A stretch of DNA of 64,000 bases from Marsupella aquatica. Lineage: Eukaryota > Plantae > Marchantiophyta. The notes beneath the pieces were generated by a model that saw nothing but the letters and a program-made list of their open reading frames with translations, was not told the origin of the DNA and searched no databases. The stretch lies in assembly GCA_973895155.1 (NCBI GenBank), contig OZ316899.1, forward strand, positions 2,625,455 through 2,689,454, read 5' to 3'. Below, one piece after another: positions 25,169-55,406 of this stretch. Numbering within the stretch: position 1 is the first letter of the stretch; each line of letters begins with the position of its first letter. Position numbers and translations under genes: made by a program.

Positions 25169-25822
25169 ATGGCTAGGACCAAGCATAAAGCCAGAAAGAA
25201 TGATACTCAAACGAGAAAGGAGGAAGATGTGTTGATGATTGAATTGTGGTCAGACATTGAGAAACGTCAGTGTAGTCCCCAACTTTGTGGCATTTGTGAT
25301 TGGCATGGAGATCTGGCCATGTGTGATGGGGCTTGCCATCGACACTTCCACCATGTTTCCAAAGTTGGTGAGGCTGTCGGCAGGTGCCCTGCCGTATTTA
25401 TTGCACCAGGCAAGGATGACAATCCTTGGTATTTTCCAGAGTGTAAGGATAACACATATAGGTGTTTTTAGTGTGGCATTGTCTCTGCTGCAGCCAAGCA
25501 GTGCCCCCAGCCATATTGTGTTTGTTTTTATTGTCATGGATGCTTGCCACTTGATGTGGAGTCTTGCCCCATCCATACATGTGTTGCCTGCCAGCAAGAC
25601 CATCGTGACCCTCATCTGGCAGAGGCCGTGCAGTGTTTGAGATGTCCCAAAACTTGACATTGTACTTGCCTAGCCAAGAGCCAGCGTGAAGGTTTTGCAC
25701 CGGACAGAGTGCCCTGGCATCATATTGCACATGACCAGGGATGTTGGATGATTTACTGTCCTGACCATCCTATTGACCCTGCTCTAGGCATAGCGGCACA
25801 TGATCACATCTCTTGGCTTTGA
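25169..25822 (+). pseudogene. EDM2/NSD-type triple-PHD protein with H3-tail-like N-terminus (CACTA-1 cargo)
   Basis: Single 218-codon frame with two internal stops: MARTKHKARK..CGICDWHGDLAMCDGACHRHFH..CPIHTCVAC..CLRCPKT*HCTCL..IYCPDHPIDPALGIAAHDHISWL*. ATG follows a splice acceptor at 25160. Confidence 0.85.
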
Positions 25823-26433
25823 TTGACGTGCCTGGTCCATTTTGGTTCAAATACATCAATACTACTATAGACATCGATACACTTAGTTAATGGAACAATG
25901 ACGTTTTGTCTGCATCACTTATTTTCTTCACACATTTTGTTCACTGTGTGAATGGTTAGCACGAGCATGGATCGAGACAATGCTCCGGGTTTAATTGACT
26001 AAGGCTCCGGAAAATCAAAGTACTCAAACTGGACTTATTTATTTGGTAATTATTATGTATACCAGTATGAGGACCATCCCAGTTGATGTTTATGGATGTC
26101 AATACTGTGGATGTGATTGAACTAATTGGACCCAGTGTTTATACGGTTGTCTTGGTTGTTGGGTGTCATGGATGGGGCATTGTCAATGGGGTATTTTCTT
26201 CAACCTGCTGTCTGTGGGTAGCAATAGAGTTTCAGGTTTGAAAGAAGCATCCTAAACACATGAAACGTAAGACATAAAACGTAAAACCTTTCTGCAAATA
26301 AAAATTCACAGTATGAACTCAAAGAGACAACTACGGAGTGGCAAGTACAGATTATGAGGGAGCTGAGCTTACTGTTGTGTCTATGTTGTAGGTTGTCACC
26401 AATGAATGTTGGAGGTGAAACACTACACTCGGT

Positions 26434-26958
26434 ATGTCGTTTTTTCTAGACTGCCACACCATATGTAGACCCCTCATACGGGTGGGTACATGGATGTATT
26501 TTGTGGTGGTTTGGCTGGTTGGTTTGGTAATCCGACAATTTGTACCCCCACCTGGAAAAATCATTGTCAACCTTGAATCTGTTTTACAGTATTGTAGGGA
26601 AAATGAGGAGGAGGTTTACTTTTCGGCAGATGAGTGTGAAGCCGGGTGTGAAGAGGATGATGAGGAATGTAGTAGTTTGCTACATGTTTTGCCATATGAT
26701 TTAGTAGTCACAAATGTATGGCCTAGGGTTCTTTCCATGTCATCAGCACAGGACATTTGCCAATATCGACTCATTAGTACCCAATGGAGGGACTTGGTAG
26801 CCATGTCCCCACCATGGAAGGCATTGAAACCACTACTTGCAGGCACAGATCGTAGACCACCATGGCATGATCTTGGGTTAGACTTAGATGACTTAATGTA
26901 CCTGCCTGAGTACCTGAGGGTTGACTATCATCGAGCACAGGAGTGGTATTTGTACTGA
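26434..26958 (+). CDS. F-box-like protein (CACTA-1 cargo)
   Basis: Open 174-aa frame; LPYDLVVTNVWPRVL..ICQYRLISTQWRDLV fits the F-box pattern; homologous copy in CACTA-3. Confidence 0.6.
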   Translation: MSFFLDCHTICRPLIRVGTWMYFVVVWLVGLVIRQFVPPPGKIIVNLESVLQYCRENEEEVYFSADECEAGCEEDDEECSSLLHVLPYDLVVTNVWPRVLSMSSAQDICQYRLISTQWRDLVAMSPPWKALKPLLAGTDRRPPWHDLGLDLDDLMYLPEYLRVDYHRAQEWYLY

Positions 26959-27303
26959 TTTGATAAGATTCACAGATCTGATATCACTCTAGTGAAGTGG
27001 GATTCTATGACTATACACCATTGTATTCTGATATGGTCATGGATGTACGTGCAGAGTAGCCTAGAGGTGTGGAGTCCAGTGCTGGTACCATTAGAGTGGA
27101 GGATTGCAGTATCCAGAGAGCTTGGAGAGGTTGCAAGGTACGTGGGTCCTCTGCATTCTGGCAAATTGAGTGGAAGACATTGATTGGATTGACTTGAAGT
27201 GGCTGAAACAATGTTGAGGAACTTTCGTGGTAGTCAAGATGACTTGAATAGGAGGGATGATAAGTTATGGCGTTGACAGACTGCAGCTTGTAGAGCTGCT
27301 GGG

Positions 27304-29946
27304 ATGACAAAGATAAAATGTCCTTGCTACATTTGCAACTGTAGGGGTAATCGTGTGAGTCTAGGGACGGTCAAAAAGCACCTCATTCAGAATTCTCGCC
27401 ACCCATCGCAAAGGTATTGGTGGGGAGAGGACTGTGACTCTTCTGATGATGAGTGGAATGCACGTTGTATGGAGGGGGATGGTGCATTTGAGGGCCCTAT
27501 GGACAATGCAAGATGTGCAGAGGAACTTGCCAATGATATGGATTGTGGCATAGATATCCCTGGGATACTAGAGGACCTGGCAATACCAAGTGAAACTGCT
27601 AATGCCAGTGAACCTGTCCAAGAAACCACTACAGAGGAGCCCACTCTGCAGGAAAGTGAAGATGGTCTCTTCAACATGGATGATCTTCTGGAGGCGGACA
27701 GTTCATCTGGAGAAGCAACACCTCAGATTTGGGACCAACAGGCAGAGGAGAAGATGATGCAAGCATTTGAAGAGGCGTGTGCCCCTTTGTATGAGGGGTC
27801 CACTACTTCCCAATTGTCATTTGTGTTGACATTTCTAAACACATGCCATAATCATGGTTTCACCAACTCTGGAGTTGATGAACTGCTTTTGTTGATGGGG
27901 AAACAGTTGATGCCTGCTAAGAATCTGCTGCCTAAAAACCTGTATGCATGCAAGAAGCTGATCAGTCATGCTGGCTTGGATTATGTCAAAATTCATGCTT
28001 GTGAGATGGATGTGTCCTATTCAGAAAGGAGCATGCTGATTGCGATGAGTGTCCACTGTGCAAAAAGCCTAGGTATAAGCAGGTTGGGCAATCAAAGCAA
28101 CCTGTGAAAGTCCTTCAACATTTCCCCCGACAGGTTGAAATGAATGTATAGGTGCAAGGCTATTTCAGAGTTGATGACATGGCATAAGGACAGTAAAAGC
28201 ACAGATGGAAAGGTCTGGCATGTTGCAGATTCTAGGGCATGGAAGGAGATTGATACAACAATTGATCCAACATTTGAAGCAGAGCCTCGCAATGTACACC
28301 TTGGATTGGCTCTGGATGGTGTGAATCCCTTTGGGGAAAACAACCTCAAGCATTCTACGTGGCCTGTGGTATTGTTGAATTACAATTTGCCCCCTTGGTT
28401 GTCCACCAAGAAGTTCTTCATTATGTTATCTTTGCTGATCCTTGGGCCCGATTCAGTGACTGACCGCAACATTGACATTTACATGGATCCATTGTTGGAG
28501 GAGATTTTGGAGCTCTGGGAGGGAGTTCCATGCTTTGATTCACTTGATAGGCCTGGCCTGAATAAGTGGTTCAATCTGCGGGCCATTCTATCGTGGACAG
28601 TGAATGACTATCCAGCTTTGGGTCTCATATTGGGTCAGGTCACAAAAGGATATCATGGATGCATTGTGTGTGGTCCCAATGTGAGCTGCAGAAGGTCTGC
28701 TGCTCTATCCAAGAATGTATTTCTGGGGAGTAGAAGGTGGTTGGAGGAGAACCATAAGTACCGCTCCCAAAGTTATGCAACAAAATTTGATGGGGAGTGC
28801 GAGCCACGGGGGCCTCCACCAAGGATGACTTGTGAGCAAAAATTAGCCTTTGCTGCTGAGGTGGAAGAGTACTTGAAAACACCTGGGGCCAAACAAGGAA
28901 GCAAGAACTGTCCTTCGAAGCTTCATGGGGTGAAGAGGACACAAGGTCTTGCAAAGCTGCCATACTGGTCGGTGAGTAAAATCACACTTGCATTCACGTT
29001 TCTTACTTAGAGATATTGCAACCAACATTGTACACACATGTCAATTTGCAGTTGGACTGATTTTCTTTTTGTTGTTTGCATGCAGAAACTTCTGATCAAC
29101 CATGTGCTGGATCCCATGCACACAGAGAAGAATATTGCTCAGAATTTGATTCACACGACTTCTGGGAAGAAGGATACCACTGCTGTGCGGAATGATATGG
29201 AGGCTGAAGGCATTCACGAGCAGCTATGGATGAAGCCTCATCCAAACAATAAGAAGGATCACTTTGTGAAGCCCAAGGCACCCTATGTGATGAGCGAACT
29301 AGAGCTGGAGAAGTTTCTGGGCACTTTGAAGAACTTGAAAGTTCCCACAGATTTTGGTAGCTCATTGGCAAAGTGTGTGAGAGCCAGCAATAAGTTGGCT
29401 GGTCTCAAGTCTCATGACTACCATTGCCTGATGCAGCAAATACTTCCCTTGGCATTGAAGGACTTGATGGCAACAGGACCTCGAATGGCTATCATTAGTG
29501 CGTGTTGTGTGTGGCATAAAATTTGCTGTAAGGTCTGGGACCCTAGCACTAAGGATGAACTGATGACGGATGTGGCACATACTTTGTGTGCTCTAGAATG
29601 CATTTTCCAGCTTTGTTTTTTGATGTCATGACACATTTGATGGTGCATATAGTGGAAGAGCTAGATATATGTGGACCTGTATCACAACGGTGGATGTATC
29701 CAATCGAGAGATACCTGACAAACCTAAAGGGTTTTGTAAGAAACAGGGCACGACCAGAGGCATCTATGGCTGAGGGTTATATCCTAGAGGAGGCATTGGG
29801 ATTTCTCATAGAGTATATATGGTTCAGTGCCAAGTAACTCGGCAGCGGGTCTGGGACTCTGAAGAAGAGGCAGGGGTTAAAGGTGTGGTCCTGGAAGGGG
29901 CCTCAAGTAAACTGTCTCTAACTGTTGCTGATCAAGATGTTGCCCA
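27304..29946 (+). pseudogene. CACTA Tnp2/TnpD transposase, 5' part
   Basis: CPCYIC..VKKHL, LGLALDGVNPFG, WPVVLLNYNLPPW, LDPMHTEKNI, LKSHDYHCLMQQ, MYPIERYL, RPEASMAEGY; intron ~28972-29085; cut by the Mutator. Confidence 0.95.
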
Positions 29947-30496
29947 GAGGCTTTTCACGGTGACAGCAAACAGCAAACAGTAGAGCTCATAGCAGCAAAT
30001 GTTTGCACCAAAAAAATCTTCCCTAATCCGACATCTCTCGTAAAATGAGATCAAAACCTCTAAAATCCATCATTTTGAAACACATCGGAATACTAGTGCC
30101 CAGCGCTACAGTCCTGAAACAGTCCAAAATACCCGAACCCTCATTCAAAACATCTATATGCAAAAGTATCCCCAAAAACATATGTATACTAGCGCCCGAC
30201 GCTAGTATACAGACCTCAATAACAGACTTAAAAACAGAGATCAACTAAAGACCATCAGATGCCAATTGATGAAACATTGGGAAAGGGGGAAGTCGTATTC
30301 TAATATCACCCAATTGTAATACATCCCAAGTTAAGATTGTTCGCTTCACAAAGGAAAGTTTAGTCAAAAAACAATGTGGACAGTCCGTCTCACTTTATAA
30401 ACACCCATCAATATTACATGTGTTCACAATAGCGCCAAGCGCTATTTTGTAAAATAGCCAATATCTATATCCCCAAAATATAGTTTTAAAGTCTGG

Positions 30497-33400
30497 CTAG
30501 CCATCAGATTCTGAATCAGTTGAATCTAGTTCTGATTCTTCTTCACTACTTTGTGATCTATCAGTAGACTCAGCTTCGTCGTCTACATACTTGCTCGGGA
30601 CGATGTCATCGACATAGCGATTCTTCATAAACTTTCTATCAGAGCCCCTTTTTAGCCTCAGGCCTTTGCTTTCCCAAGTCAGCATTCTCACAAAATCTGC
30701 TTTTCGAGCCGCCTTTTCTGCATAAGAAGGCAAGACAAACGGCTTCTCCAGGGTTTCTATTGCATTCCTAACGACTTTCCTCCATAGTTGAAAGCGCTTC
30801 CAAAGATTCCATTCAGACCTAGAAAGTTGAATCCGATATCTTTAGTCGGGTCCGGGAAAATGGTGGAATGTTGGAGACACTAACGTCACACTTAAAAAGA
30901 AAAAAAAGACAGGGAAGCTAAAGATCATTACTCAGAAGACTCTTCACTATCCTCAGATTCAGAAGACCCGAGGTTCACCACTTTCTTGGAGGCCCCATCA
31001 TCTTTGGACTGTTGCGTACCATCGCCTCCATCATTGTCCTCGTCAGAATCAAAATTAAGAACAACACGGAGTCTGTCCTGCTTCTTACTCCCCACCTGCC
31101 GGTGCGGAGGCGTGGACGTGGAGGCCTCTTTATTCTCGAGAAGTCCAAAGAAAACTTTTGTGGCAGTGTCGAGAAACTCTTTACGATTTTCAATCCCGAC
31201 TACAAACCTCCCACAATGATCTCCAGCCACAAATGTACTTCCGGCCCCAATAGTCCAGTCCATGACAATATCCCCAGGGAGGGTAATTAATTCTAGAACG
31301 GACTGCATGAAACCCACAGGCAAACGTAAGCTCCGACAAATGCAAGCTCCGGTAGAGGATCATTTTTTGGCACGGGAAAACCAATGAGATTGGTTATTGA
31401 AGGATCCTCTGTATGTGAAAGAGGCCGAAATTTGGGATCCTTAGGGACCCTACCTTTGGACGAAACACGCCCAAAAACATTGAGAGTGAGCGTAAAAATC
31501 TGCACATCGAATAATGTTTTGTTCATAATAAACATCAGATGCTACGTCGAGAATACGGAAACATTTCACGAAGAGGATATTCCACACTAGCGCCTGGCGC
31601 TAGCATCGCCGTCAATCTCCAAAGGAGGACACCAAACAGAAACTTTGGAATAGCGCCAGGCGCTACTATACATACCTGCATATCCGAGCGAGGCCTGTAC
31701 ATTGGAGTGCCCATAACAACATTGTGTGTCGAGATACACTGGAATTTCTGTGAATCTGGACAAGCTGCAATGACCTCGGAAACTTGGTCATAGTCGCCTC
31801 TGTGCAAAATCGCTAACAATCCATCATCTGCTAGGAAAGGATCCATTGTTCTGAAAAAGGCACTTGGAATCATATAATCTTGAAGGTTCCATTTAGGAAC
31901 CTTCCTATCCACAAGTGTTGGTTTCAACCCAGTCGGAAGATATATGAAACCAGCATCAACTCCAAAAGCTCTTTCTTTTCCCCCTCGGACAACCCCTTTT
32001 TCTCGATCCCCAGACTTCACCAGCTCTTTCCCCCAACCTTCAATATTAGAAACCCAGTCCGGCTTTTCTCCCTTGTTAAACAGGGAATCAAAACATTTTG
32101 TAACACTCGACTCCACAAAACAATGTCGAGTACACTTTTGTTTGAAATTCCCCACATCTCTTTGCAATCCAGTAGACGCAACTGAATCTCGGGACGAAGA
32201 TCCGAGCCTATCCTCAAGTGTTCCTCTCTTTTTCTTCTTCTTCATACTTGTCGCGTCCACTGGAACCACTGCCTTTCCACTCTCCCCAGGGGTTCCCTGA
32301 TCTGGTGTATTTTCCGCACCAGTGTTAGCTTCAGAGGCCTGAGGAGTAGCGTCCTCTTTTACATCACCGGTAGCATCCGACTTCCTTCCCCCTGAAAGAC
32401 GGAGAGGCGTTACTCAACGGAACTAGTTCTCATAATAGCGCTCGGCGCTAGTATCAATTGGGGGAAAATACGTCATACAAACAAGAGCGGGAATACTTTA
32501 CTAAATCCTAAGAGGCAAAATTTTTTAAGCGATCGAGTTGATTCACTGGGAGCTGCAGATTCATTCTTGGCCTTCACTCTTGGCTTTCGGCTCCGGTCAA
32601 CATGCACGACGACTGTCTCACATTTCTTCTGCAGTTCAGTTGTCGAAGCGTCCACTTCAATCGCAAGACCCTGCTTCATCTCCGATATGTACCTTGCTGG
32701 GATTTGCAACTTCTGTAACTTCATGAAAGCGTCTTTCTCCACCTCGTGGAAAGGCAGATCCCATTTGTCAGTGTCAAGATACCATGGGCAGTGGAGTCTC
32801 TCCCACTCTGACAAGGCGCGAGGTGGGAACTTTCCCTCAGCTGGGTACATCGAATACAGATCAACAAGGTGGTCACCATCTTTGATAATCACCCACTTTT
32901 GAAATGCACCAGGGTAAGCCTACAAAACCTCAGGAGATCGCAACTCCATCCACATGTAGAAACGGTAAACGTATCGCTTGGCTCGTTTCCGGTTCCGCTC
33001 AGTGTAGTCCTCCTTGTCTGCATACTTTGATGGCCACATTATGTTGAAAAATTTAGCCTTGACAAGGTCTCCAAATGATTTGAATTCTTCGATAATGGAC
33101 TTCATGAGAACATCCAGGGACTCACAACCAGACTTGACAAGATGATCATCTGGCATGCGATCCAAAACCTGCTCGAGCGAGGTGAGGATCAATCCAGTAG
33201 CAATTTCCTCCACTGAATTCCAGATATGCCAGGTATGGCACCATTGTTTTACAGGATCGTCGTTCACACTAGCCGGATGAAAGAACTGTTTCCGAATCTC
33301 CGGAGTGCAATGGGCAACGAGAAGGGTACACCTTAACTTTGGATCGAGATAAGTAACTGCAGTAAACAGACGAGCACGGTCCATAGTGCAAACAACTGTA

Positions 33401-34599
33401 TCGGGCTTTTTTTCTCTTTTGTTCTTCTCTGTGACGGGAAACATTTCGGCACATGTAGCCAAGTAGTCACCAAAATCAGGGTGCAGTAATGGAGTGATCT
33501 TTGTTACTTTGATAGCCCAGTCTTTTGTCGCTTCCTTCATCATAGCTTCATGCCTCTTCTGCGTCTCCTCTTCGGACCACGGAGTCCCCTAGGAGGCTAC
33601 AAAATCCATGTCCACTTTGAACTGGTTTGTGTAAGATTTAATCTTGTTCTCACACAAAATGTAGATGAGCGCGTCTTGTGGCATCTTGTGTGTATACCAA
33701 GAACCCTTTCGAGTCTTCTTTCAAATGGCTTCAAACTTAGCATAACTCGTAGCATCAATGAGGGGTTTGTAGTGCTCTAGGTCACGGGATAAAAGATGAG
33801 AGATTCTGTCGGCATCAAGAATCCAAGATGGCTCGACCACAGCTTGTCCCAACCTACGTCAAAATTTAAATGTAAATTAGCAGCGCCGGGCGCTAGTAAA
33901 ACACCAAAGATAATATCACATCCAAAATCCATCTTGAACTAGTACGTCATATTAAATGAGGTTGTCCTGAGGAATGGCTTACTGGTTGACAGCGTGCATG
34001 GCAGCCTCGAGCTCCACGAGGGAACCTTTATCTCCATTGAAAACAATGCAAGTCACACGAGGGTGGTACTTAATGTTGTCCGGATGCTCTGCTGTCACAA
34101 TCAACCACAAATACAAACGGTGATTCCATCGAAGACACAAAACATCTTGTCCTTCAAAACTCTGAAATCAGGATCAGCGTCACACTCTTCCTCGAACTTG
34201 TCATTCTCGGAAACCCAGATTGGGTCCCAAGAGGCTCTAATCTCATTAGTGCAAATCTGTGGAACCCCATCCGCATTCGTTGGCTGTACGTAAAATGGCA
34301 TGCCCATGCGCGAATTGTATCCAGAAATCCGGAATGACTCCTTCAATTTGTCGAATCCCAAAGGACAAGACATGCTTGGAAATGTAATCGTCCATTGAAA
34401 GTCCAGCAACACCAAAATCAACTCGAGCAACTTCCTCACTCGTGTCCATTCTCCCCCTTCTTGATCGCGCAGTCCGAAGAGTTGAGCCAATGTCTGAATG
34501 TGAATGAGACGCAGCGGACCGAGTCACGCGACGGGTGTACACAGGACCTGAAAAAGAGGACTGTGAGGACTCGGAATGACCGGCATGACTATCTCCCAT
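30497..34599 (-). pseudogene. MULE accessory gene: ParB/Srx-like N-terminus plus beta-class amino-MTase-like C-terminus
   Basis: KMFCVFDG(N)HRL with a 1-nt deletion at ~34115. C-terminal region: DAGFIYLPTGL..VPKWN..PFLADDGLLAILH | intron 31675-31500 | PVGFMQSVLELITLPGDIVMDWTIGAGSTFVAGDHCGRFVVGIE. Several C>T-type stops and frameshifts; exon ends approximate. Confidence 0.72.
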
Positions 34600-34882
34600 C
34601 CTTGTATTACCCCACTGAGAGATGGCGATGGCGTTGAGCAGAACGTCGGACAGTATCATACAACTCTCCCAGAGCCCCTGATCCAATACGGAGTAACAGA
34701 CTTAGGTATAGAATGTCACGCTCGAACAGGCTGCTCCAGGAGAATCACGTCTCTCCCACGAGCGCCAAGCCTAATCAGAAGGTTAAGACATGGAGTCTTG
34801 AGCACATTAGAGTGTTGCTCAACGGTAACACCAACAGATCTGAACACTTGGAAGATTACCATTGGACCAGAAACCGTCTTAT

Positions 34883-34958
34883 GTGACCAGCAATCCTCAA
34901 TGTTATGCGTGACCAGCAATCCTCAAGGTTACGCGTGACTAGCAATCCTCAGTGTTAC
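34883..34958. repeat. 26-bp tandem repeat, 3 copies
   Basis: GTGACCAGCAATCCTCAA(T/G)GTTA(T/C)GC units upstream of the accessory gene. Confidence 0.85.
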
Positions 34959-36579
34959 CGTTAAAATATGACCGTTGATCGTTTTGGCCTTATTGATAGC
35001 GCCAAGCGCTAGCAAAAACAACTCCATATTACCTGATTCAAACTACGTACTAATTTCAATAGCGCCAAGCGCTAACAAATCTCCCACGCATATATATTTT
35101 ACACAATTCAAATGGAATTCATGGATAGATGGACAAAATGGACATTATTTGGACCATTTTATCCGTAAGCGTTATTAGCGCTCGGCGCTATCATAAATTG
35201 CATCCAAATCGATGTTACTCATCACTAGAGAGTAATACAAACTCTTACATATCCACAAATATTTAAGAATCCATCTGGTGTTAGAAGCATAAGTTTGAGC
35301 ATTCCAATGCTAGCGCCGAGCGCTAATATGGAACCTATCACGGTTAAGACCACTCCATCAAAAACTACAAGCATTACGAAGACTTTCAAAAGACATTTGG
35401 TCAAAAGATTTACTCATTCCCGTAAGGCAAAACATCAAAAAACACAAACTGAATAATGAAAAATGCATAAGGGAATGGCTAATAGATTCAAACTCCATTT
35501 AATGGTATCGGCTTTACTTCACAACACTAGAAGAAAACCTGTGTTTTACTACTACAGGCCCTGCAACTACTTTGCCTAAATAACTCATACGTGGTGCCAA
35601 CCACTGTTTTTTTAATGGGTTGTAATAATCTGCATTTTATTACTCTACTTAGAACTATGTTACCTTAATCACTGATTACAACTCTCCTTTTTGCCACTAA
35701 AACTTACATCACTTGAATTAGAGTTGTATATTACACAAATTTGCAAATCACTACAATCCACCGTCCACTACACCGTCGATGTTTACAACTCTATTTTCAA
35801 CTAAGATTTTACCACTGGCGGAAACCACTACAAATACAAATACCACCAATATTTGAATGGTAAAGGTGCTTTTTCAATAAACTCCCAATCAAGTGAATCA
35901 TTTCCAAGTGATCTCAATTACTTGAAATAATGTCATTTGTGAACACACCTATTGTTACTATAAATATCACCAATAGTGGAGTCACAAATGAATTTTGTCA
36001 AAGTAACTTAAAATATTTTAGTGACAAGGACATTTTTACAAACAACTTAAGATTGAGTGGATTATTTGTCACTGTCCAAAAGTCTTTAAATAAAGTCATT
36101 ATTATCACATATTGTACAACTACAAATGTCACTCATATTAGAGTCCAATAAATATCATTTGATGCAACTTTAGACCAAGTGTCACATTCTCCATAGTCCA
36201 AAATCACTCTAAAGAATGTCATTCTCTTCATACATTTTATTAACTCCAAATGCCACTAAGAGTAGAGTGCCAATGCAGGGCCTTGCAAATGACTTGAAAT
36301 GAAGTGGATCATCTTCCATTCTCAGAAATCACTATAAATAATGTCATTCTTTAAATACATTTTGCAACTACAAATGCCACCAGCATTAGAGTGTCAAAAC
36401 AATTTTGACAATTGACTAAAAATTGGGCAGATTATTTTGTGATGTCCAAAACCTCTCCCAATGATGTTATTATCAACAAACATTTTCAGTCAAGATATGC
36501 ATGCCACTCGAATTACAATGGCAAACGAATTATATTTTACAACTTGTACCCAAACCACTATAGAACAGGTGGTTATAGG

Positions 36580-38560
36580 GTTTTGGGCACCTGTCACTTG
36601 AAATACCACCGTGTTTTGAGTTGGGAAAATTATGTGTTTAAACTTGCAATGAAGTGCATTTATATGTACCAGCCCAAACCACTTCACATAAGGTCGTTTC
36701 GGGCCCTCACCTTTTGGCAACTACAAATTACACCCGTATTTGAGTCATGCAACACACATTGGTGCGACCACTTGCTATGAACTAGTGCTAAAAGGAGTGA
36801 ATTGTGTGGACGCATCACATAAGCTCCATATTTGTAATTCCGTAGAGTCTTGGAGTGATTTGGGTGGAGTTCATGATGTTCCATAACTTGTGTGCCTCAA
36901 ATCTCTTCACCTTGGCATTTTATGCGTCACAACCTCATTGTCGTTGCTATAACTAGTTGGCACACATGATGGGGGTGTCCCACGGCTTCACCATGGGGTG
37001 GCTAACACAGAGGAATTGTGATGGCGGCGGGCCCAACCCTCCTCCTTTAATGGTGGCCCTCTGAGAATTGTCGCAAGGTGGATCCACTTCTCATTATCCA
37101 CTGTAAGTTTGTCACTCCCCAAATCACTAAAAACTCTGTTCTTCAAAGCCCTCATTTCTAGCGACTAACACTATCACTCAAGCTGGGGTGATACATCACG
37201 CATCCCTTTGAACAACTTATTGTGAAGTGGTAGTCCTAGGGTGATGGTTGTTCACAAACCACTGCAAATGAGGTGATTTTAGGGTTTAGGGCAAATGCAA
37301 CTTAAGATACCACCGTTATTTGAGTTGAGAAGTTAAATTGGATGTGAACACTTGCAATCAAGTGCATTTGAATGTACCAGCCCAGTTGACTCGAAAAAAG
37401 GTCCTTTTGAGCCCTCACCTTGCAAATACAAATTGCACCAGTATTTGAGTGGTACAACACATATTGGTGGAACGACTTGCCATGAACTAGTGCTAAAAGA
37501 AGTGAATTGTGTGGGTACATCACATAGGCTCCATATTTGTAATTCCGTAGAGTCTTGGAGTGAGTTTTGTGGAGTTCATGATGTTCCATCACTTGTATGC
37601 CTCAAAGTTCTCCACCTTGGCATTTTATGCGTCACAACCTCATTGTCGTTGCTATAACTAGTTGGCACATATGATGGGGATGTCCCACGGCTTCACCATG
37701 GGGGCGCTAACATGGAGGAATTATGATGGGCGCTGGCCCAACACGCCACCTTTCGTTGTGGTGCTCCAAGAATTGCCGCAAGATAGATCCCATTCTGTTA
37801 TGCATTGTAAGTTTGTCACTCCTCAAACCACTCAAAACAATGTTCTTCAAAGCCCTCTTTACCAATGACTCAAACTATCACTGAAGCTTGGGTGGTACAT
37901 CACGGATGACCATTGTACCCAAACCATTACAAATGAGGTGGTATGAGGGTTTAGGGCAAATGCAACTTGAAATACCACCATGTTTTGAGTTGGGAACTAA
38001 ATTGTGTGTAAACACTTGCCATAAGTGCATTCTTATGCAAGTTCTTATGCACTAGCCCAAACCATTACAAATATGGTCCTTTGGAACCCTCACCTTTTTG
38101 GCACTACAAATTGCACCCATATTTTAGTGATGCACAACACAATGGTGCAACCGCTCGCCATGAACTAGTGGTAAAAGGAGTCAATTGTGTGGACGCACTA
38201 CATTAGCTCTATGTTTGTAATTTATAGAGTCTTGGAGTGATCTGTATGAAGTTCGTGATGTTCCATCTCTTGTGTGCCTCAAAGCCCTCCACCTTTGCAT
38301 TTTATGCATCATATATAACTCCATTGCCATTGTTCTAAGTGGTTGGTACACGTGATGGGGGTGTCTCCCCGCTTTACCATGGAGGGGCTAATAGGGAGGA
38401 ATTATTATGGCCGCCGGCCCAACACTCCGGCCCCTTTGGTTGTGGCCCTTCACGAAATGGTACAAGGTACTACATCCATGGCTCTTGGGATTGTCCTCAT
38501 GAACTACTGAAAACCATTGCAAACAATGTTGTTCCAAACCTTCACATGTATGCCACTACT
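36580..38560. repeat. ~680-710-bp tandem unit (about 3 copies)
   Basis: The unit seen in CACTA-1 recurs at ~36808, ~37513 and ~38191; TTTAGGG at 37278-37291 and 37950. Confidence 0.85.
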
Positions 38561-41789: not shown

Positions 41790-42227
41790 TTAATCTTCCC
41801 ACCAGCTTGGCTTGTACGTGTCCGAATCATCGTTGGAATCGCTAGAACCAACGCCCCAACGAAACCCACCCCGACTGCAAGAGGAGTCGTCGTTGGACCC
41901 CGACTCGTCGTGGGTCCCTGCATCATTGTTTGTATCCTCGCCTTCACTTGAAGAACTTTTTCCATGTCTAGGTGATGGGTTTGACAAAGATAAGCCCGCC
42001 TTCGACACCCGACATTTCTGCACGACGGGTTGAACTTCTGCTTTAGCCTAAGGAGCACCATCTGGTGCGGATACAACCCGGGTTTTCGCAATTACTTTCC
42101 CCTTTGCTGAGATCGGGACATTCGAATGAGAAGGAGGCTTCACGAGAGACTTCTCCTCAGTGCCCTCTCCATCGCTACCGCTTCAAAATGTAACCTGCGC
42201 CTTCCCCTTAGCTCGTGGTGGAGCCAT
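41790..42227 (-). pseudogene. Ser/acidic ORF in the MULE (third gene or displaced 5' exon)
   Basis: ATG 42227 MAPPRAKGKAQ... stays in frame through two stops (TGA, TAG) into the 41790-42023 ORF. Confidence 0.45.
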
Positions 42228-42874: not shown

Positions 42875-45800
42875 ATGGGACGATCGATCGTAGTGAGACG
42901 CAAGGACACACGGGATGTCATCACGGTTATCGTATCCCCTGAATCTCAGTCAAGGAGAGTTTCGGATGAATACTTGGGGTTGAGATTTGATGTTTCCAAA
43001 GAGTGTATTCTCTCTGTGTCCCTCCTCCCTAAGGATTCAAAGGCAAATACCATCTTCTATGATGTCATTGATGGACTCAGGTTTTGGACGATGTATCCGG
43101 AGAAAGTATACGAGGTCTTTGTTTTGGAAGATTCTAAAGCATCGGAAGATCTATGTCCTGTTCCCGGTGGTGTTGATGTTGTCAATCTGTCTAAAACTTC
43201 GGAAGACGACGGGAAGAATTTGCCCCTTTCCTTTGATGTCCCGAAAAGGATCTCAGTGGATCCCTTGGTGGTGAAGATGGAGGTTCAAGATGTCCCAATT
43301 GTATATCGGCAAAGTGTGATGGATACTATCCTAAAATCGAAGGGACATAGCGAGTTATCTCGTTTCATCAGGGAGAAGGATTTCACGCATCAGATAGTTC
43401 CCAGCCTCCCGATGACATACAATGGGAATGTTGTGTTTGAGTTGCCTCCAGTTGATTGCGTGAATTCGAAAGGGGAACGACTGAAGGACATGGACCGCGG
43501 GAAGGATTGCTATTACTGGACGCGCATTGTCAAGACATCTTTGAATGTTTTACCAAAGAAGATGTGGGATTTTGGAAAGGTTCAGTGTACCGGTTCTCTT
43601 GAATGTCGGAACAATTCTTGCCAATTCTGAAGAGACAAAAAGACTAGGAACAACCAAGTCTGGGCGAGATCACCAAAACTATCAGGAACCTTTCGAGTTG
43701 GAGAACTCATACCGCAAGGTGGTATTGTCTGTCACCACTATTCTGAACCTCCGATGTGTACAAGATCGTGTCCGGCCATGATGTTCTATATGTATCCTTC
43801 GGCCAAAGTGGATTCAACTCATTTGGCGTATATGTCCTGGCTGGCTGTGCACATGGAATTTCACAACCATCCCAGTCGTCAAGTGTGGTCGAGAGAGGCT
43901 GAAAAGGTTGCTAAGACTCACCTCGCAAAGGAGTTCTAGGCTAATCCACGAGCTACGCCTGCTGGGATAAAGAATGCGGCTACAGACTCTCTAACCAATG
44001 CCCTCTGTGAGGAATCCATGGAGGAAATGTCTTCGGAAGAGGAGAAGGAGATCTGGGAGTCCCTCATGGTTGTTGCTACCCCACAAAAGTTTGCTTTTGT
44101 TTTGCGAAGTGTGAGACAAGACCAGAAAGGCAAAGGTGAGCTTGAATATTTGGTGCGGATGCAAAAGTGTGTGAGACTTCCCTTTCTTCATAGGTATTTG
44201 CTTCCAGGCCAAGGATGTCGAGACGAAAGTGCTCACATCTTCAAGATGACTGTGAAAGGCGAAGGATCTGGGATCGACCTTCTCCGGAAAATGCAGACCG
44301 GTGGTTCATTAGAAGGGTCATGGGTGAGTTTCGACGTCATGCATAGAATTACATCGGACTGGCTAACTTTTAGTGTTCATGTATATGATCATCACTATCG
44401 GGCGCTTTGTACAATTTTCACTTGTGAATTAAAGGCTGAAGACACCAAGTCCTTAGAGAGAGTGTGGCGATTGATGATAGAAGTTGCGAGTGAAAATGGC
44501 CTAGAGAACATTCAAATTCGAGGATTCATGGCGGACAATGCCCAGGCTGGATGGAATGCGGTGCAAAATGTTTTCTTCAATGGGGTACCTGATCCTTACC
44601 GAGAGCGATCAGATGCGTTTCATTTTTATCAGTCATTTCGTCAGCATTCTCGCAAAGGTGTTCCAGAAGGAAAACTCGAAGAACACAAGAAGATGTGGGA
44701 CGGTCTTCGTAACGCAAAAACATTTTTGGACGCATATCATATGTCAAGAGAGATCGACGATTGGTGGAGAGCTGGAAATTGCCATCAGGGGAAGCTTTGA
44801 ATGTTGCAAGGGTGGCTCTCATGGTGGGTCGTCCGTTGGAGACAATGGGGAAACTTCATTAGGCTGGTAAGGATTTTCTTAGATTCATGATAGTCCGTTA
44901 CCATTGATTTGTAATAGCGCTCGACGCTAATATGGAAAATGATTATTCTGACTCCAATTCCTTGTTACAGTATAGTAGCGCCAAGCGCTAGTATGAACAA
45001 GCACACTTTTGCAACTATGAACATGGCAGTGATGTAAGAGATTTGATAGCGCCAGGCGCTACTTATATATTAGAGAGTCCATATTGCATAAATACAAACT
45101 ACATTTGTCGTGAATTACTGTAGTTACTAAATTTTGTTTCCGATGACAGAGCAAGAGTGCCGAGGAGGCAGGTATGATTCCGAATTGTACTGGTTCGGAA
45201 TCGGTCCATGCAGGCATGAAGGCGTGGCAAATGAAGAAGCGGGTTGGCCTCATGGAGGGGTGCAAAACTGACCAAAACCGAGCCATATGTCAGATAGCAG
45301 CATATACTGCATACGGTCGAGGATTACATTGGGGAACTGGACCCACTATCTTTGAGCTGGCTTTTTTATCTGACGACATGACAGGGTCTCCACGTCTATT
45401 TGAAGAAGCAACCAATCTCCTTCTTTCCAACGCAGCTGAATTTGATTTGGAAAGAACTGTTCCATTGAATGGAGACTTCATAACTCGATCGGTGAAGCGA
45501 AAAGGTAATGCAAGTGGGAATGTCTCGGCACAAGACTCTCACAGGCATGATACTATCCTTGTGACTTCACCAAATACAAGGGGTTTGAAGAGAAGAAACC
45601 TCCATTCCACAGACTTTGAGAAGATGTCTTCCACACCTTCTGCTGGTGGAAGTGGCGTTGTTAATTTGTCTCAAACTGAGAGTGAAGATTCTGAGGAGGT
45701 CGTCATCCTTGAGACACCCTCACGTCGGACGACAAGATCTTCTGTTCCTCCCGTAGGACATCAAGCTGAGGCCGCGCCTGAGGAATCTCTTCTCCCAATG

Positions 45801-46670
45801 GAAACTGACATAGCTCCAGGTCTCTGGCAGCTCCGACAAACTGCAAAACGCGGTGCTGGTCCAGCTTGTAATGGGACCCTCGGTTGGAGAGGAAGCCGCG
45901 ATGAATGTCAAAATCGAGTAAAGAAGGTTGGGTTTCCAAATCCAAAAGGAGTTGTTGCAATATCTGTAAGAGGATGTAGACTTTTTAGAGGAGAACCTCA
46001 TCCGGACCAGATATGGTTTTGCCCAAACAACAAATGTCACAAAAGTCGGCCAAGAAGAGGTGTTTCAAACATTCCCAATATACCATCCGTTCTTCCCATT
46101 GCGAGAGGGACCAATCTCCAGGAGGGCGAGATCCAATTCTTGAGAGAACAAGGTCTACTTGGTACAGGAGAGGTAAGGGAAGGTCAGGAGCCATCCCCGT
46201 CTGAGTTACGCATCGATGTGAATTTGTTCCAAGAGAGGATCAATTTAGCGGACCCAATTTTCAAATGTGGCTCTAGGAATGGAAGGAAGTGCTTGCAGAG
46301 AGTGAATCTAACTCAAACACATTACAAGAAGATCGAAGCATCCGAAACAGAAGTAATGAGGCTCGTATGCGAGAGAGATGTCACGAGTGGGAATGCGTGG
46401 GGGAAGCAGTATTGTATCAGAACACATGAACATGAGAGGAATGCTGCCTCTTATTGGGTGCAGATTTGTTGTTTCCCTTGCTGTTCATGTGAGGATTTCT
46501 ATCGGAGGCACATTTATAGGAAACCTTACATGCCTTGCAAACATCTATATTGGGTATTCAGGACAGTGTTAAAGTTGAGTCTTCACGATTCGACACTATC
46601 TAGTCAACCAGTTCTGACATTGGGCGAAGTCCGTTACCTGCTTGATCGACAAAATGGAACGGACATGTAG
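42875..46670 (+). pseudogene. MULE transposase with GCM-like N-terminus and C-terminal SWIM finger
   Basis: DCYYWT..CTGSLEC..CPA..HNHP; WVSFDVMHR; FMADNAQAGWNAV; DAFHFYQS; intron 44867-45148; SWIM CSCEDF..PCKHLYWV. One frameshift (~43626) and two stops (43937, 44798). Confidence 0.88.
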
Positions 46671-46974
46671 TCAATTTGGTGCCGTTCAACAGCTTTAAGT
46701 GGCATTTGTCTTTTCTAACGGGCAGAAGATGTACCCGTTTCTTATCTAGAAAAATGTGTTGTCTGTTGGTAGCGCCTGGCGCTAGCCAAAGTTTGAAACA
46801 CATAGCAAATATATTGACTATTAAATAAAGCGTGTCTTCTTATAATGACCTTTATATTGCCCGTTTATTATCATTGAATGGTGGGCCCCATTATGTTAGC
46901 ATTTCAGAGAGCGCTTATATGGTTGTTATTTTTTAACATCGAGCCATTTTTTTGAACTTTGAATAACCTATAAA

Positions 46975-52100: not shown

Positions 52101-53618
52101 CAAACGCATGTCTATTAAAAACAAATTCATGGAGCTCAGGTTGTTGTTGTATATAAAGCGCAGCAAGGTCCAGAACTGCCTGCAGTCCCAGCAAATCATA
52201 CATGCTAAATCACAGGATAGGAGATCAAGAAGTTTTCACAGTTTCTCATTTTTGTAGAATCTGAGATGTTGTTGGCCCAAGAGATGAGTTTCCCTTAAGA
52301 GTCAGGGATGTCAGCAGTGTGGGCCATGTAATACAGTTGAGAATGATGGCAAGTATAATTTGTTAATGGGTCCAATGCCATGTTTGTGAGCTATTGAGTT
52401 GGATAGGAGAAAAAAACCAAAACATTGTCGCAACTGCTTCCAGAACAATCATTCATGGTTAGACTAAGCTCGGATGAATACCCCTTGCTTGCATGGGGCG
52501 GACACAATGCGGAATAGGCTATCATGGAGTTATCAAATGGATCTTCAGTTTTCATGATAAATGTCCTATGTGTAGATTTCAGAATTAGAACAAAACTACT
52601 CTTAAGAATACTGTACTTAGCGATTCTTCTTTTCTTGTGAAGACATTGCCGCAAATGTTTCCTTGAGCTCCTGTCATACCAGTGTTTCCCATGCCGTTTT
52701 CAGCAACTACTGACGGAGTTGGCACCGTAAGTTAAAATTTATAGGTCTCATTACTTCAATCCAAAATTCTATGTAAAAAGACATGAACTAGCCTTTGTGC
52801 TTAATTGCTATATTCTATCTGACTTGATTTGATTTCACTGCTGCCTGAAATTTGTATTTCTTGCTTGAGTCCCAGTTTGCTGGAGTTTTGTTGCTCTCTG
52901 TGCTATGTTGTGCACATTGTTGTCTTTGCTTTGTTTGCTCTGATCAGTCTTAGCCTGCTGCAGACAAGATAGGCAATGAAACCTGTCTGTTCAATTTAAA
53001 ACTTGAGAACCAATGCTTTGCTGAAAGTCAATTGTTATTTGTTCTGTGTTGCCCCTACAGATTTTAAAAAGGCAGGGTGAGCGACCCTGCTGGATAGCAA
53101 GCGAAGGGTGTGTGCTGCATTTTGATCTGGACAACCAAGTGTAGAGTTGACTCTTTCTGAATGTTGTAGTCTGTTTTGCCTTGAACTGGGCCATGGATGA
53201 ATTGAGCTGGTGAACAGTTTTTTTCTTTCCCATCTTCCTGAAGCTTTGTCTGCTTTCTGCCTCCTCAGTGGAGGTTCACTTGCACAACACAACAACCAGT
53301 GAGTTCTCTCTTTGCTGCAACCTGCAAGGTGAGACTTTCGATCTGCCTGGATGAAAAAACAGGATCCAATTTATATGATTTATGTACATGTCCATGGTGA
53401 ACATGGTTTTATATACATGCTCTTTGTCTTGGGAACTCAGCATCAAATATGTACTATGCACTTTGCATGCTATGTGTATACTGTGACCTGTCGTTGGAAC
53501 CAATTTAGTGAGTGGGAACTGATAAGTGCAGGTTGGTTGTTGTGGGCAAGGCAAGTCGACCTCCTACTCACCTTGCTCATCAAAGGACGTGAATAGAGGA
53601 CATCACAACAAAAGCAAC

Positions 53619-54068
53619 ATGGTGAGGACCCGCAACGCTGAACATGTGCGGCTTGCACGCAAGGCAAAGATGTTGCACCTTGAGTATGTCAGACTGGGGA
53701 TCCTTCCAGCCCAGTCTGCATGGTACTTTGAGTACCCTGTTCTTGCCAGGAACAACTACAGCCGGCCTCTACCTGCTTCAGTACCCTTCCCGACATCCTT
53801 GGTATTTGTGTCTCTTGTACATGACCCACCACAAATTAGGTGCCAAGGGTGTGTGCATAGTTGCCAATATGACTGTCCTGCCTGTAGCGCTTCTGGCCCA
53901 AAGTTGGATGATCGTTCTCTTGGATGTCGGTTTTTGCATAGAGCACAATGTATCATCTGGAACCACTCGCCATCCTGCAGTGTGCCTGGCGATGTCACTT
54001 GTCCTGCCCTCCCAGACCCCACCACCGGTGACTTTGGTGTCTACACATGTTTGGATCACACGCTCTAG
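53619..54068 (+). CDS. Small Cys-rich protein (CACTA-3 cargo)
   Basis: Intact 149-aa ORF MVRTRNA..RCQGCVHSCQYDCPAC..GCRFLHRAQC, downstream of a splice acceptor at ~53531. Confidence 0.5.
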   Translation: MVRTRNAEHVRLARKAKMLHLEYVRLGILPAQSAWYFEYPVLARNNYSRPLPASVPFPTSLVFVSLVHDPPQIRCQGCVHSCQYDCPACSASGPKLDDRSLGCRFLHRAQCIIWNHSPSCSVPGDVTCPALPDPTTGDFGVYTCLDHTL

Positions 54069-54726
54069 AGGACCACTTGTCACACCGCATGCACAGACCA
54101 GAGACCATTGACCTATAACTTAACACTCTGACTTGAACAGAGAGGATATTTACTTAAAATTTTGAATTATGAGCAATTTTGGGTCCAGGGTTTAGGGTCA
54201 ACAGTACATAACTTATCCTATTATGGTTGCACTAAGTCGAATATCCTAATTTAAGAGGCTAGCAAGCTCACTTTAAAGTCTCCTTTCAAAGACTGGAATT
54301 AATGGGCCATGTGATAACCTGGAAAAAGTGATTTATGCCTAACTTATTTGTCTTATTCACTATTTAGGATGTATAAATCACAACCCTGATAACACTGCTT
54401 GATACCAATCCTATTCGAAAAATGCCTATTTTACATGTCACGACTATTGTATGTGATTCAAGTGCATTAAATCTTGTTGCAGATCTCCTTTAGTGAATCA
54501 TAGCCACAAAATTGAGGTGAAGGTGGAGCTATTGTACTAGGGGATCAGTTTTCATTGTGGGCTTAACAAAACCAAAAAGTATGTCTACTCTGCATCTATG
54601 TGTGATCATTTCATTGCAGTAGCAATTGCCACTCTAGTCTATATGCTACAGTGTACTTTTTGTACACTGCTAAATTGTATTGTCTGTGCACTCTGCTAAA
54701 TTGTACTATCTGTCTCATGCGTAGGC

Positions 54727-55406
54727 ATGGCACGCCCTAAAATCCAAGCCAAGAAGCAGGGGACAAAGGTGAGCAACACAGGTGTAGTTGGGCCAAATGG
54801 TAGTAACTTCTCCGTGCGTCAGATTTTCCAAAAGGCAGCTCATTATTGTGCCATTTGTGACGATGGTGGGGGCTTAGCCATATGTGAGGGCCCTTGCATG
54901 AGGCATTTCCACCTCAACCCAGAGTCTAACCTTGCTGCAGAAAACAACTGTCCAGGGGTGGGCCTCCCGTCAGCACACCAAGGAGGCTGGATGTGCACTG
55001 ATTGTTTGGAGAAGCAGGCTAAGTGTGCACAGTGTGGGATGTTGGGGTCTTATGAGGGCTCTGTTGATGCTCCACCACTTGTTAGGAAATGCCCTGACAG
55101 ATATTGTGTGAGGTTCTTTTGTTTTTCATGTTTGCCCGATCTGCCACAGCTTGCCCACTTCATAAGTGCAAGGCATGTGGTCAGCACGATGAAGATTTCT
55201 GGGTGGACATAGTCCACTATGTTAGGTGTCCCACCATGTGGCACTTTCATTGTTTGAAGGAGTGTCAAGCAGAAGGCTATGCTTGTGACAGACACATCTA
55301 TCATCACTCTGCACATGGTGTTGATCGATGGATCTTCTATTGTCATCGCCATGCCATAGATCCTACTTTGCACACTCCCATGAGAGATCACATTTCTTGG
55401 CTTTGA
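54727..55406 (+). pseudogene. EDM2/NSD-type triple-PHD protein (CACTA-3 cargo)
   Basis: MARPKIQAKK..CAICDDGGGLAICEGPCMRHFH..WMCTDC..CAQCGMLGS..(fs ~55137)..CPLHKCKAC..RCPTMWHFHCL..FYCHRHAIDPTLHTPMRDHISWL*. Confidence 0.9.

What the first reader, a model, noticed from the sequence alone, without database searches (positions are those of the whole stretch)
25169..55406. Two diverged CACTA families both carry an EDM2-like triple-PHD reader gene
Seen: homologous ~220-aa genes at 25169-25822 and 54727-55406 in the same position upstream of Tnp2, both ending DHISWL*. From memory they match the PHD cassette of plant EDM2 (CPLHxCxxC, RCPxxxHxxCL, IYCxxHxIDxxLxTPxRDH). Established: EDM2 reads H3K9me2/H3K4 marks and, with ASI1 and AIPP1, allows full-length transcription through heterochromatic introns. 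Inference: a maintained TE gene that reads or competes for silencing marks, not random Pack-CACTA capture.
Basis: partly seen in the sequence, partly recalled or inferred. Interest (0 to 1): 0.8.

Follow-up and report, generated by a model that had tools for sequence, protein, structure and literature searches.

The report
Transposon-borne EDM2-type triple-PHD gene
Two old, now broken copies of a small gene for a histone-tail-reading module, related to the PHD part of the plant anti-silencing factor EDM2, sit at the head of two diverged CACTA transposons; intact relatives elsewhere show that the transposon lineage acquired this gene once and has kept it under selection, which suggests the element uses a chromatin reader of its own.

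Summary
Homologous ORFs of about 220 aa lie at 25169-25822 and 54727-55406, both ending in DHISWL and both upstream of Tnp2 transposase in collinear elements. Both window copies are pseudogenes: copy 1 has two in-frame stops and copy 2 has a 1-nt deletion.

Intact relatives of 205-245 aa exist in Logan, JGI and ENA assemblies. Six further assemblies keep the gene at the head of the same element. Five show PHD, usually followed by BRCT, then Tnp2; the sixth ends after a weak BRCT-like ORF.

A profile search finds EDM2-family proteins as the nearest long relatives. An AlphaFold model (pLDDT 87) matches Arabidopsis EDM2 residues 207-431 best.

The 18 transposon-type sequences form one clade (100/100) on a long stem. 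dN/dS is about 0.26 (0.16-0.45). The gene has no introns, whereas a Marchantia relative splits the cassette over at least five exons.

So this is one old acquisition that has been maintained, not two recent Pack-CACTA captures. It is not an EDM2 orthologue, because it lacks the RFD-like N-terminus and the long C-terminal part of EDM2.

Histone binding and any anti-silencing role remain inference, and I could obtain no RNA evidence. First-stage notes report other copies elsewhere in this genome. I found no paper describing this gene.

The parts
25169..25822 (+). PHD gene copy 1 (subfamily of P0003 and P0165). It is a pseudogene with in-frame stops at 25469-25471 and 25655-25657.
   Evidence: It is 69-76% identical in protein to the intact relatives P0003 and P0165.
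54727..55406 (+). PHD gene copy 2 (subfamily of P0001 and P0002). It is a pseudogene with a 1-nt deletion after 55141 that shifts the frame.
   Evidence: It is 75-83% identical in protein to the intact relatives P0001 and P0002. Contigs from other runs carry one extra base at 55141.
26434..26958 (+). F-box-like ORF of element 1, between the PHD gene and the transposase.
   Evidence: Pfam F-box E 4.9e-4, 20.3 bits against a cut-off of 20.5. It is 75% identical in protein to 59092-59298 of element 2. A homologue lies in L011.
27244..29895 (+). Tnp2 transposase region of element 1. Homology to element 2 and to L006 stops at about 29820-29900, so the element is cut off there.
   Evidence: PF02992 E 2.5e-67 on 28144-29010. 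Collinear with element 2 and L006.
55989..56852 (+). BRCT ORF of element 2, directly downstream of the PHD gene.
   Evidence: PF00533 E 8.8e-12. The same PHD-then-BRCT order is seen in L006, L011 and L012, and weakly in L003.
56993..57341 (+). 5' part of the F-box-like ORF of element 2.
   Evidence: tblastx to 26422-26751. The joint 57341 to 59090 appears in all four runs.
57342..59089 (.). A 1748-nt insertion that interrupts the F-box-like ORF in this copy. Related copies lack it.
   Evidence: Contigs in X1, X2, X3 and X5 join 57341 to 59090, and depth over the segment is lower. Collinearity with element 1 breaks here.
59090..59407 (+). 3' part of the F-box-like ORF of element 2.
   Evidence: 77.6% nucleotide and 75% protein identity to 26747-27056.
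59650..63207 (+). Tnp2 transposase region of element 2: a Transpos_assoc-like start, PF02992, DUF4218 and a DUF4216-like part. The element continues towards the end of the window.
   Evidence: PF02992 E 1.6e-29 on 60847-61518. DUF4218 E 1.3e-27 on 61998-62405. tblastx to L006 and L004.

Best explanation
The two ORFs are decayed copies of a genuine accessory gene of a CACTA/EnSpm (Tnp2) transposon lineage. The gene encodes a stand-alone nuclear protein of about 220 aa with four parts. First comes a short basic N-terminal motif (AR[P/T]K.KAKK, probably a nuclear localisation signal). Next is a flexible linker. Then comes a compact triple zinc-finger module (PHD1, atypical PHD2, C5HCH-type PHD3). 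The protein ends in a conserved ...TPxRDHISWL tail. The module is homologous to the PHD cassette of plant EDM2-family proteins and, more distantly, to NSD PHD1-3. It entered the transposon lineage once, most likely from a host EDM2-family gene and possibly through a processed copy, because it has no introns. It was then inherited as the lineage split into the subfamilies of copy 1 and copy 2, and purifying selection has kept it intact in active lineages. Shown here: homology, single origin, selection, conserved position, and the decay of the window copies. Inferred: the protein binds histone H3 tails as the EDM2 cassette does (H3K9me2 and other marks, per Lei et al. 2014 as cited in PMC7472560) and acts for the element at its own heterochromatic copies. 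It lacks every other EDM2 domain. My preferred reading (about 35-40%) is therefore a minimal reader that occupies or masks the silencing mark, or otherwise favours full-length transcription of the long transposase gene. The next best reading (about 25-30%) is that it tethers the transposition machinery, together with the neighbouring BRCT protein, to particular chromatin.
For: Intact ORFs of 205-245 aa ending in HISWL occur in many independent assemblies. Position at the head of the element recurs. L006 has PHD, BRCT, Tnp2, DUF4218, DUF4216. L004 and L005 have PHD then Tnp2. L011 has PHD, BRCT, F-box-like, Tnp2 and L012 has PHD, BRCT, Tnp2. L003 has PHD then a weak BRCT-like ORF and ends there. 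The nearest long relatives are EDM2-family proteins with DNMT1-RFD plus the PHD_NSD architecture, one of which NCBI names ENHANCED DOWNY MILDEW 2; the closest of all are liverwort proteins. The AlphaFold2 model has pLDDT 87 and pTM 0.80. Its best Swiss-Prot fold match is Arabidopsis EDM2 207-431, E 1.3e-13, TM 0.68. Among solved structures, the sequence profile finds NSD2 and NSD3 at E 2e-17, and the fold search finds PZP and NSD PHD5-C5HCH histone readers. The core zinc-ligand Cys and His of PHD1 and PHD3 and the first two Cys of PHD2 are invariant across 54 cassettes; the remaining ligands are conserved in at least 90%. The transposon-type sequences form one clade: 9 rows at 100/100 with a stem of 1.68, and 18 rows at 100/100 in all bootstrap trees. 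dN/dS is 0.26-0.29 for P0001 against P0002 and 0.26-0.33 for P0003 against copy 1; bootstrap intervals are 0.16-0.45 and never reach 1. The PHD region has repeat depth of the same order as the transposase region in four runs. The Marchantia relative Mp1g03210 splits the cassette over at least five exons, while the transposon gene is one exon.
Against: Both window copies are dead. In run X1 no contig covering 55141 carries the extra base seen elsewhere, so many copies may share the frameshift. Amplification therefore does not need the gene in cis. No transcript evidence was obtainable: the runs found behave like DNA skims. I could not locate the element termini (CACTA inverted repeats, 3-bp target duplications), so that the gene lies inside the element rests on conserved order and repeat depth. 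Pfam hits on the window copies are below the gathering scores. Where the transposon clade attaches among EDM2 lineages is unresolved, and the tree has no NSD outgroup, so donor and direction are inferred. Histone binding was not tested for this protein. PHD2 carries Cys where EDM2 has His, and the linker between PHD2 and PHD3 is shorter, so specificity may differ.
Confidence: 0.8

Rival explanations
1. Pack-CACTA-style passenger. A fragment of a host EDM2-like gene was picked up and is carried along without any function for the element, and the apparent conservation is hitch-hiking.
For: CACTA elements are known to capture host gene fragments (established knowledge; review PMC13317346 listed). 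Both window copies are broken. The frameshifted form may be the common one in run X1.
Against: dN/dS is 0.26 with intervals that exclude 1. The zinc ligands are conserved across subfamilies that are only 40% identical. Start and stop positions are conserved. There is a single clade on a long stem. The gene is a single-exon ORF covering the whole cassette, not a chimeric fragment. The elements are autonomous-type and carry a transposase.
Confidence: 0.08
2. The PHD ORF is not a separate gene. It is a 5' exon or alternative product of the transposase transcription unit, as TnpA and TnpD arise from one En/Spm transcript, and it serves as the chromatin- or DNA-binding part of the transposition complex.
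For: It has the same orientation as the transposase and is always the first ORF. It lies only about 420 nt upstream of the Transpos_assoc/Tnp2 ORF in L004. En/Spm is known to use alternative splicing (established knowledge).
Against: The stop codon directly after ...HISWL is conserved in both subfamilies. Other complete ORFs (BRCT, F-box-like) lie between it and Tnp2 in most contigs. No splice evidence exists either way.
Confidence: 0.1
3. Two independent, recent captures of host EDM2 PHD sequence by two unrelated CACTA families.
For: The two copies are only about 40% identical, and the flanking non-coding DNA is not alignable.
Against: Both fall in one 100/100 clade separated from all host-type cassettes by a stem of about 1.7 substitutions per site. 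They share derived features: the N-terminal basic motif, Cys for His in PHD2, a shortened PHD2-PHD3 linker, and a stop after HISWL. The transposases have diverged to a comparable extent, about 55% identity over the tblastx segments.
Confidence: 0.02

Closest known systems
EDM2 (ENHANCED DOWNY MILDEW 2) family of plants, PHD cassette
   Same: It has the same three-finger cassette in the same order, with the same ligand spacing and the same ...YCxxHxIDxxLxTPxRDH tail. EDM2 is the best structural match (Arabidopsis EDM2 207-431) and its family gives the best long sequence matches. The EDM2 PHD fingers bind H3K9me2 and other marks, and EDM2 acts with AIPP1 and ASI1 at heterochromatic introns (PMC7472560, PMC7529245).
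   Different: The transposon protein is only the cassette, about 220 aa against about 1300. It has no RFD-like N-terminal domain (PF12047 in EDM2 hits) and nothing of EDM2's long part downstream of the cassette. It is carried by a transposon, has no introns, has Cys in place of the PHD2 His, and has a shorter PHD2-PHD3 linker. Identity is 31-37%.
NSD1/2/3 histone methyltransferases, PHD1-3 and PHD5-C5HCH modules
   Same: The zinc-finger cassette is homologous. The profile finds NSD2 and NSD3 at E 2e-17. Pfam names the families PHD-1st_NSD, PHD_NSD and PHDvar_NSD. Fold matches to NSD PHD5-C5HCH have TM about 0.6 on the target.
   Different: There are no SET, PWWP or AWS domains. The relationship is more distant than to EDM2.
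Chromodomain of chromoviral (Ty3/Gypsy) integrases
   Same: A mobile element carries its own histone-mark reader.
   Different: The fold is unrelated. It belongs to a retrotransposon, not a DNA transposon. It is fused to the integrase, not encoded as a separate gene.
VANC anti-silencing proteins of VANDAL (Mutator) elements, and TET/JBP genes of fungal KDZ/EnSpm-like transposons
   Same: These are accessory genes of DNA transposons that act on the host's epigenetic silencing (PMC10398659 and PMC12730594, listed). The TET/JBP carriers include relatives of EnSpm-type elements.
   Different: VANC binds DNA motifs and is unrelated in sequence. TET/JBP is an enzyme that removes a mark. Here the product is a reader module with no catalytic domain.

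Membership tests
EDM2 family | Triple PHD cassette (PHD1, PHD2, C5HCH-type PHD3) with conserved zinc ligands, followed by the TPxRDH motif | tested here: met
   Alignment of 54 cassettes: the core Cys and His ligands are invariant and the rest are conserved in at least 90%. The profile hits named EDM2 at 3e-27. The top Foldseek hit is EDM2 207-431.
EDM2 family | N-terminal RFD-like domain (PF12047) upstream of the cassette | tested here: not met
   EDM2-type hits carry PF12047 at residues of about 10-135. The transposon proteins begin about 35-40 aa before PHD1.
EDM2 family | Long region downstream of the cassette (about 800 aa in EDM2, including a methyltransferase-like domain, from memory) | tested here: not met
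   The ORF stops 0-10 aa after ...HISWL in all intact members.
EDM2 family | Binding of H3K9me2-marked H3 tails and partnership with AIPP1 and ASI1 | not testable with these tools
   This needs peptide arrays, ITC and pull-downs. Background is in PMC7472560.
CACTA/EnSpm superfamily | Tnp2-type transposase with its associated domains (PF02992, Transpos_assoc, DUF4218, DUF4216) | tested here: met
   PF02992 at 2.5e-67 and 1.6e-29. DUF4218 at 1.3e-27. The same set is found in L006.
CACTA/EnSpm superfamily | Terminal inverted repeats beginning CACTA, with 3-bp target duplications | tested here: inconclusive
   Element 1 is truncated at about 29900 and element 2 runs past the end of the window. No convincing terminus was found upstream of either PHD gene or in L006.
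Pack-CACTA (non-autonomous carriers of gene fragments) | No transposase; the captured fragments are chimeric and evolve neutrally | tested here: not met
   A transposase is present. The ORF covers the whole cassette, and dN/dS is 0.26.
NSD histone methyltransferases | A catalytic SET domain together with the PHD cassette | tested here: not met
   Pfam finds no SET domain in the ORFs or in the EDM2-type hits.

The most novel reading that the evidence does not exclude
The protein is a transposon-encoded decoy of the host's own heterochromatin reader. As a minimal EDM2 cassette, it binds H3K9me2-marked nucleosomes on silenced copies of the element. It either shields the mark from the CMT/SUVH reinforcement loop or substitutes for EDM2 to let RNA polymerase II read through the long, methylated transposase gene. 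Together with the co-carried BRCT and F-box-like genes it would form a mobile counter-silencing and repair toolkit. In some copies the N-terminus (MARTKHKARK in copy 1) might additionally act as an H3-tail-like pseudo-ligand.
Probability: 0.3. Interest if true: 0.85.

Novelty: new variant of a known kind. Interest (0 to 1): 0.62.

Why it matters
Mobile elements that carry parts of the host's epigenetic machinery are rare, and they reveal how the contest over silencing is fought. Known cases are DNA methyltransferases in retrotransposons, TET/JBP in fungal transposons, VANC in VANDAL elements and chromodomains in chromoviruses. Here a very abundant DNA transposon lineage has kept, under selection, the reader module of EDM2. 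EDM2 is the host factor that deals with heterochromatic transposons inside genes. If the protein binds H3K9me2 chromatin, it gives a small (about 25 kDa), naturally isolated EDM2 cassette for structural and biochemical work; a sequence-profile search of the Protein Data Bank found no solved EDM2 cassette. It also makes a question directly testable: can a transposon blunt or redirect H3K9me2-based silencing, or choose its integration sites, with a borrowed reader? The recurrent PHD-then-BRCT pairing suggests a conserved accessory module that has not been described for CACTA elements.

Tried and rejected
1. RNA evidence. Both run searches returned only runs of unknown kind. These behave like low-coverage DNA skims, with contigs of 100-400 nt, word depths in the thousands and longest contigs of 15-67 kb. 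The one read-laying run therefore gave copy-variant information but nothing on transcripts or splicing.

2. Element termini. A scan for CACTA motifs and repeat searches upstream of both genes and in L006 gave no convincing inverted repeats.

3. Continuation of element 1 beyond about 29900. I found none in 29500-54000.

4. Identity of the organisms. Run names are coded, a search of papers for the sample accessions found nothing, and cluster look-ups give no names for the transposon-type proteins.

5. Donor lineage. Liverwort EDM2-like proteins score best, but the trees leave the attachment point unresolved and no NSD outgroup sequence was available as a usable id.

6. H3-tail mimicry at the N-terminus, an idea from another scan note. 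Copy 1, P0008 and P0057 have [A/T]RTK. Most relatives have ARPK, and several start MPSARPK or ...FTSRKK, so a free Ala-1 is not general. I rank a nuclear localisation signal above mimicry.

7. Literature. Four searches found no description of a CACTA-borne EDM2-type PHD gene. Subscription journals are not covered.

8. The first homologue search, with the 140-aa window piece, found only 3 proteins. The profile searches were needed to find the rest.

Full report
OBSERVATION

Copy 1 (25169-25822) is one reading frame of 217 codons that ends ...HDHISWL then stop. It is interrupted by TAG at 25469 and TGA at 25655. In the intact relative P0003 the corresponding codons are CAA and TGG.

Copy 2 (54727-55406) ends ...PMRDHISWL then stop. 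It shifts frame once because of a 1-nt gap after 55141 relative to intact relatives.

tblastx shows that the two surrounding elements are collinear. The shared order is PHD gene, a region at 26422-26751/57017-57346, an F-box-like part at 26749-27056/59092-59407 (75% protein identity), then the Tnp2 transposase region at 27244-29895/59677-62365. Element 2 additionally has a BRCT ORF (55989-56852, PF00533 8.8e-12) and a 1748-nt insertion. Tnp2 (PF02992) scores 2.5e-67 and 1.6e-29, and DUF4218 scores 1.3e-27. Element 1 stops being homologous at about 29900 and does not resume in the window.

WHAT THE GENE IS

On the window pieces, Pfam gives PHD-1st_NSD, PHD_NSD and PHDvar_NSD in order, all below their gathering scores. 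A word-based search found three intact proteins of 226, 220 and 217 aa that end in DHISWL.

A profile of these three, run against 1.84 billion representative proteins, gave 378 hits:
- The top hits are short proteins of 166-245 aa of the same kind.
- Next come liverwort proteins of 690-770 aa (Calypogeia, Riccia, Marchantia Mp1g03210).
- Then come many proteins of about 1250 aa with the match at residues of about 220-440.

Sampled members of the last group have DNMT1-RFD plus PHD_NSD and PHDvar_NSD domains, and NCBI names one of them ENHANCED DOWNY MILDEW 2.

An alignment of 54 cassettes shows the core zinc ligands invariant and the remaining ones conserved in at least 90% of rows.

An AlphaFold2 model of P0001 is confident (pLDDT 87, pTM 0.80), with a disordered stretch at residues 9-25. 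Its best reviewed-protein match is Arabidopsis EDM2 residues 207-431 (E 1.3e-13, TM 0.68), ahead of a Dictyostelium PHD protein and NSD3, NSD2 and NSD1. In the PDB the sequence profile finds NSD2 and NSD3 (2e-17). The fold search finds PZP domains and NSD PHD5-C5HCH, all of which are histone H3-tail readers.

IS IT A TRANSPOSON GENE?

The gene sits at the head of the same kind of element in six further assemblies:
- L006 (ENA metagenome contig, 13 kb): PHD, BRCT, Transpos_assoc/Tnp2, DUF4218, DUF4216, and a weak Transposase_24 hit.
- L004 and L005: PHD, then Tnp2 420 nt downstream.
- L003: PHD, then a weak BRCT-like ORF.
- L011: PHD, BRCT, F-box-like, Tnp2.
- L012: PHD, BRCT, Tnp2.

Laying contigs of four public runs on 54300-60200 shows that the PHD region has repeat depth of the same order as the transposase region. 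It also shows that most copies lack the 57342-59089 insertion, and that contigs with one more base at 55141 exist in three of the runs.

ONE ORIGIN AND SELECTION

In maximum-likelihood trees of the cassette, the transposon-type sequences form a single clade. Nine rows give 100/100 with a stem of 1.68 substitutions per site. Eighteen rows give 100/100 in all bootstrap trees. Copy 1 and copy 2 sit in different, well-supported subclades. Where the clade attaches among EDM2 lineages is unresolved.

Shared derived characters are the basic N-terminal motif, Cys in place of the PHD2 His, a shortened PHD2-PHD3 linker, and the stop directly after HISWL.

Pairwise dN/dS is 0.26-0.29 for P0001 against P0002 (dS about 0.5), 0.27 for P0001 against copy 2, and 0.26-0.33 for P0003 against copy 1. 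Bootstrap intervals are 0.16-0.45 and never reach 1. Deeper pairs are saturated at silent sites yet keep 40-55% protein identity.

The Marchantia relative Mp1g03210 encodes the cassette on at least five exons. The transposon gene is one uninterrupted exon in genomic DNA. This argues against a recent genomic Pack-type capture and fits a processed-copy origin or an old one.

MECHANISM

Shown: a conserved, selected, stand-alone EDM2-type triple-PHD module encoded at the 5' end of Tnp2 elements.

Established background: the EDM2 PHD fingers bind H3K9me2 and other marks. With AIPP1 and ASI1, EDM2 promotes read-through of heterochromatic introns (PMC7472560, PMC7529245).

Inferred: the transposon protein is a nuclear H3-tail reader that works at the element's own silenced chromatin. 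It lacks every other EDM2 domain. I therefore favour a mark-occupying or read-through-promoting role (about 35-40%) over chromatin tethering or integration targeting with the BRCT partner (about 25-30%). A passenger without function is unlikely (under 10%).

One caveat applies. In run X1 no contig covering 55141 carries the extra base, so many copies may share the frameshift. This shows that the gene is not needed in cis.

COMPARISON AND NOVELTY

The gene is not an EDM2 orthologue, because the RFD-like domain and the C-terminal region are absent. It is also not an NSD enzyme, because there is no SET domain. It is best described as a new accessory gene of CACTA elements, derived from the EDM2 cassette.

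Functional analogues are chromoviral chromodomains, VANC proteins and the TET/JBP genes of fungal transposons. Four literature searches found no description of it. First-stage notes of this scan report further copies in the same genome, one said to be intact and some next to a TET-like gene. I could not read those stretches.

LIMITS

- I obtained no RNA data.
- I did not locate the element termini.
- The organisms are coded or unknown.
- The tree has no NSD outgroup.
- No binding data exist for this protein.

Noticed in passing
window 55989-56852; L006:3587-4402; L011:2983-3948; L012:1577-2053: A stand-alone BRCT ORF follows the PHD gene in element 2 and in three unrelated contigs, and weakly in L003. 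PHD-then-BRCT therefore looks like a conserved accessory pair of this CACTA lineage. Element 1 and L004 lack the BRCT ORF.
   Followed up: partly
window 26434-26958 and 56993-57341 plus 59090-59407; L011:4491-4712: An F-box-like ORF (Pfam F-box 20.3 bits against a cut-off of 20.5) is the most conserved segment between the two elements (75% protein, 77.6% nucleotide identity). It recurs in L011 but not in L006 or L004. It could be a transposon-borne adaptor for the host SCF ubiquitin ligase.
   Followed up: partly
window 57342-59089: A 1748-nt insertion splits the F-box-like ORF of element 2. Contigs from all four public runs join 57341 directly to 59090, so related copies lack the insertion. 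I did not identify its nature.
   Followed up: partly
window 25169-25198 and 54727-54756; N-termini of P0001-P0009, P0025, P0057, P0143, P0165-P0174: A basic N-terminal motif, AR[P/T]K.KAKK, is conserved. Copy 1 reads MARTKHKARK, close to histone H3 ARTKQTARK. Most relatives have Pro at position 3, and several begin MPSARPK or ...FTSRKK, so a free Ala-1 mimic is not general. A nuclear localisation signal is the simpler reading.
   Followed up: partly
window 25469-25471 and 25655-25657: Of the two nonsense codons in copy 1, TGA against TGG in the intact relative P0003 is a G-to-A transition. TAG stands against CAA in P0003 and is a single C-to-T step only through an assumed CAG intermediate. 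These are the changes expected from deamination of methylated cytosines in a silenced element.
   Followed up: partly
window 54661-54712: A tandem 26-nt duplication (85% identical) lies immediately upstream of the start codon of copy 2.
   Followed up: no
window about 29900-30094: Homology of element 1 to element 2 and to L006 ends here, in the middle of the transposase region. A scan note places a Mutator element at 30094-46784, which may have truncated element 1. No remainder of element 1 was found downstream.
   Followed up: partly
window 13475-15938 and 35525-37979: A 2.5-kb repeat at 85.5% identity, with internal tandem-like sub-repeats at 14452-15955 and 36544-38459, is unrelated to the CACTA elements.
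   Followed up: no
L013 (Marchantia polymorpha Mp1g03210 locus): Liverworts have a short EDM2-like paralogue of 690-770 aa that ends soon after the cassette (...RDHIRFP...). It scores closest to the transposon proteins. Its cassette is split by at least four introns.
   Followed up: partly
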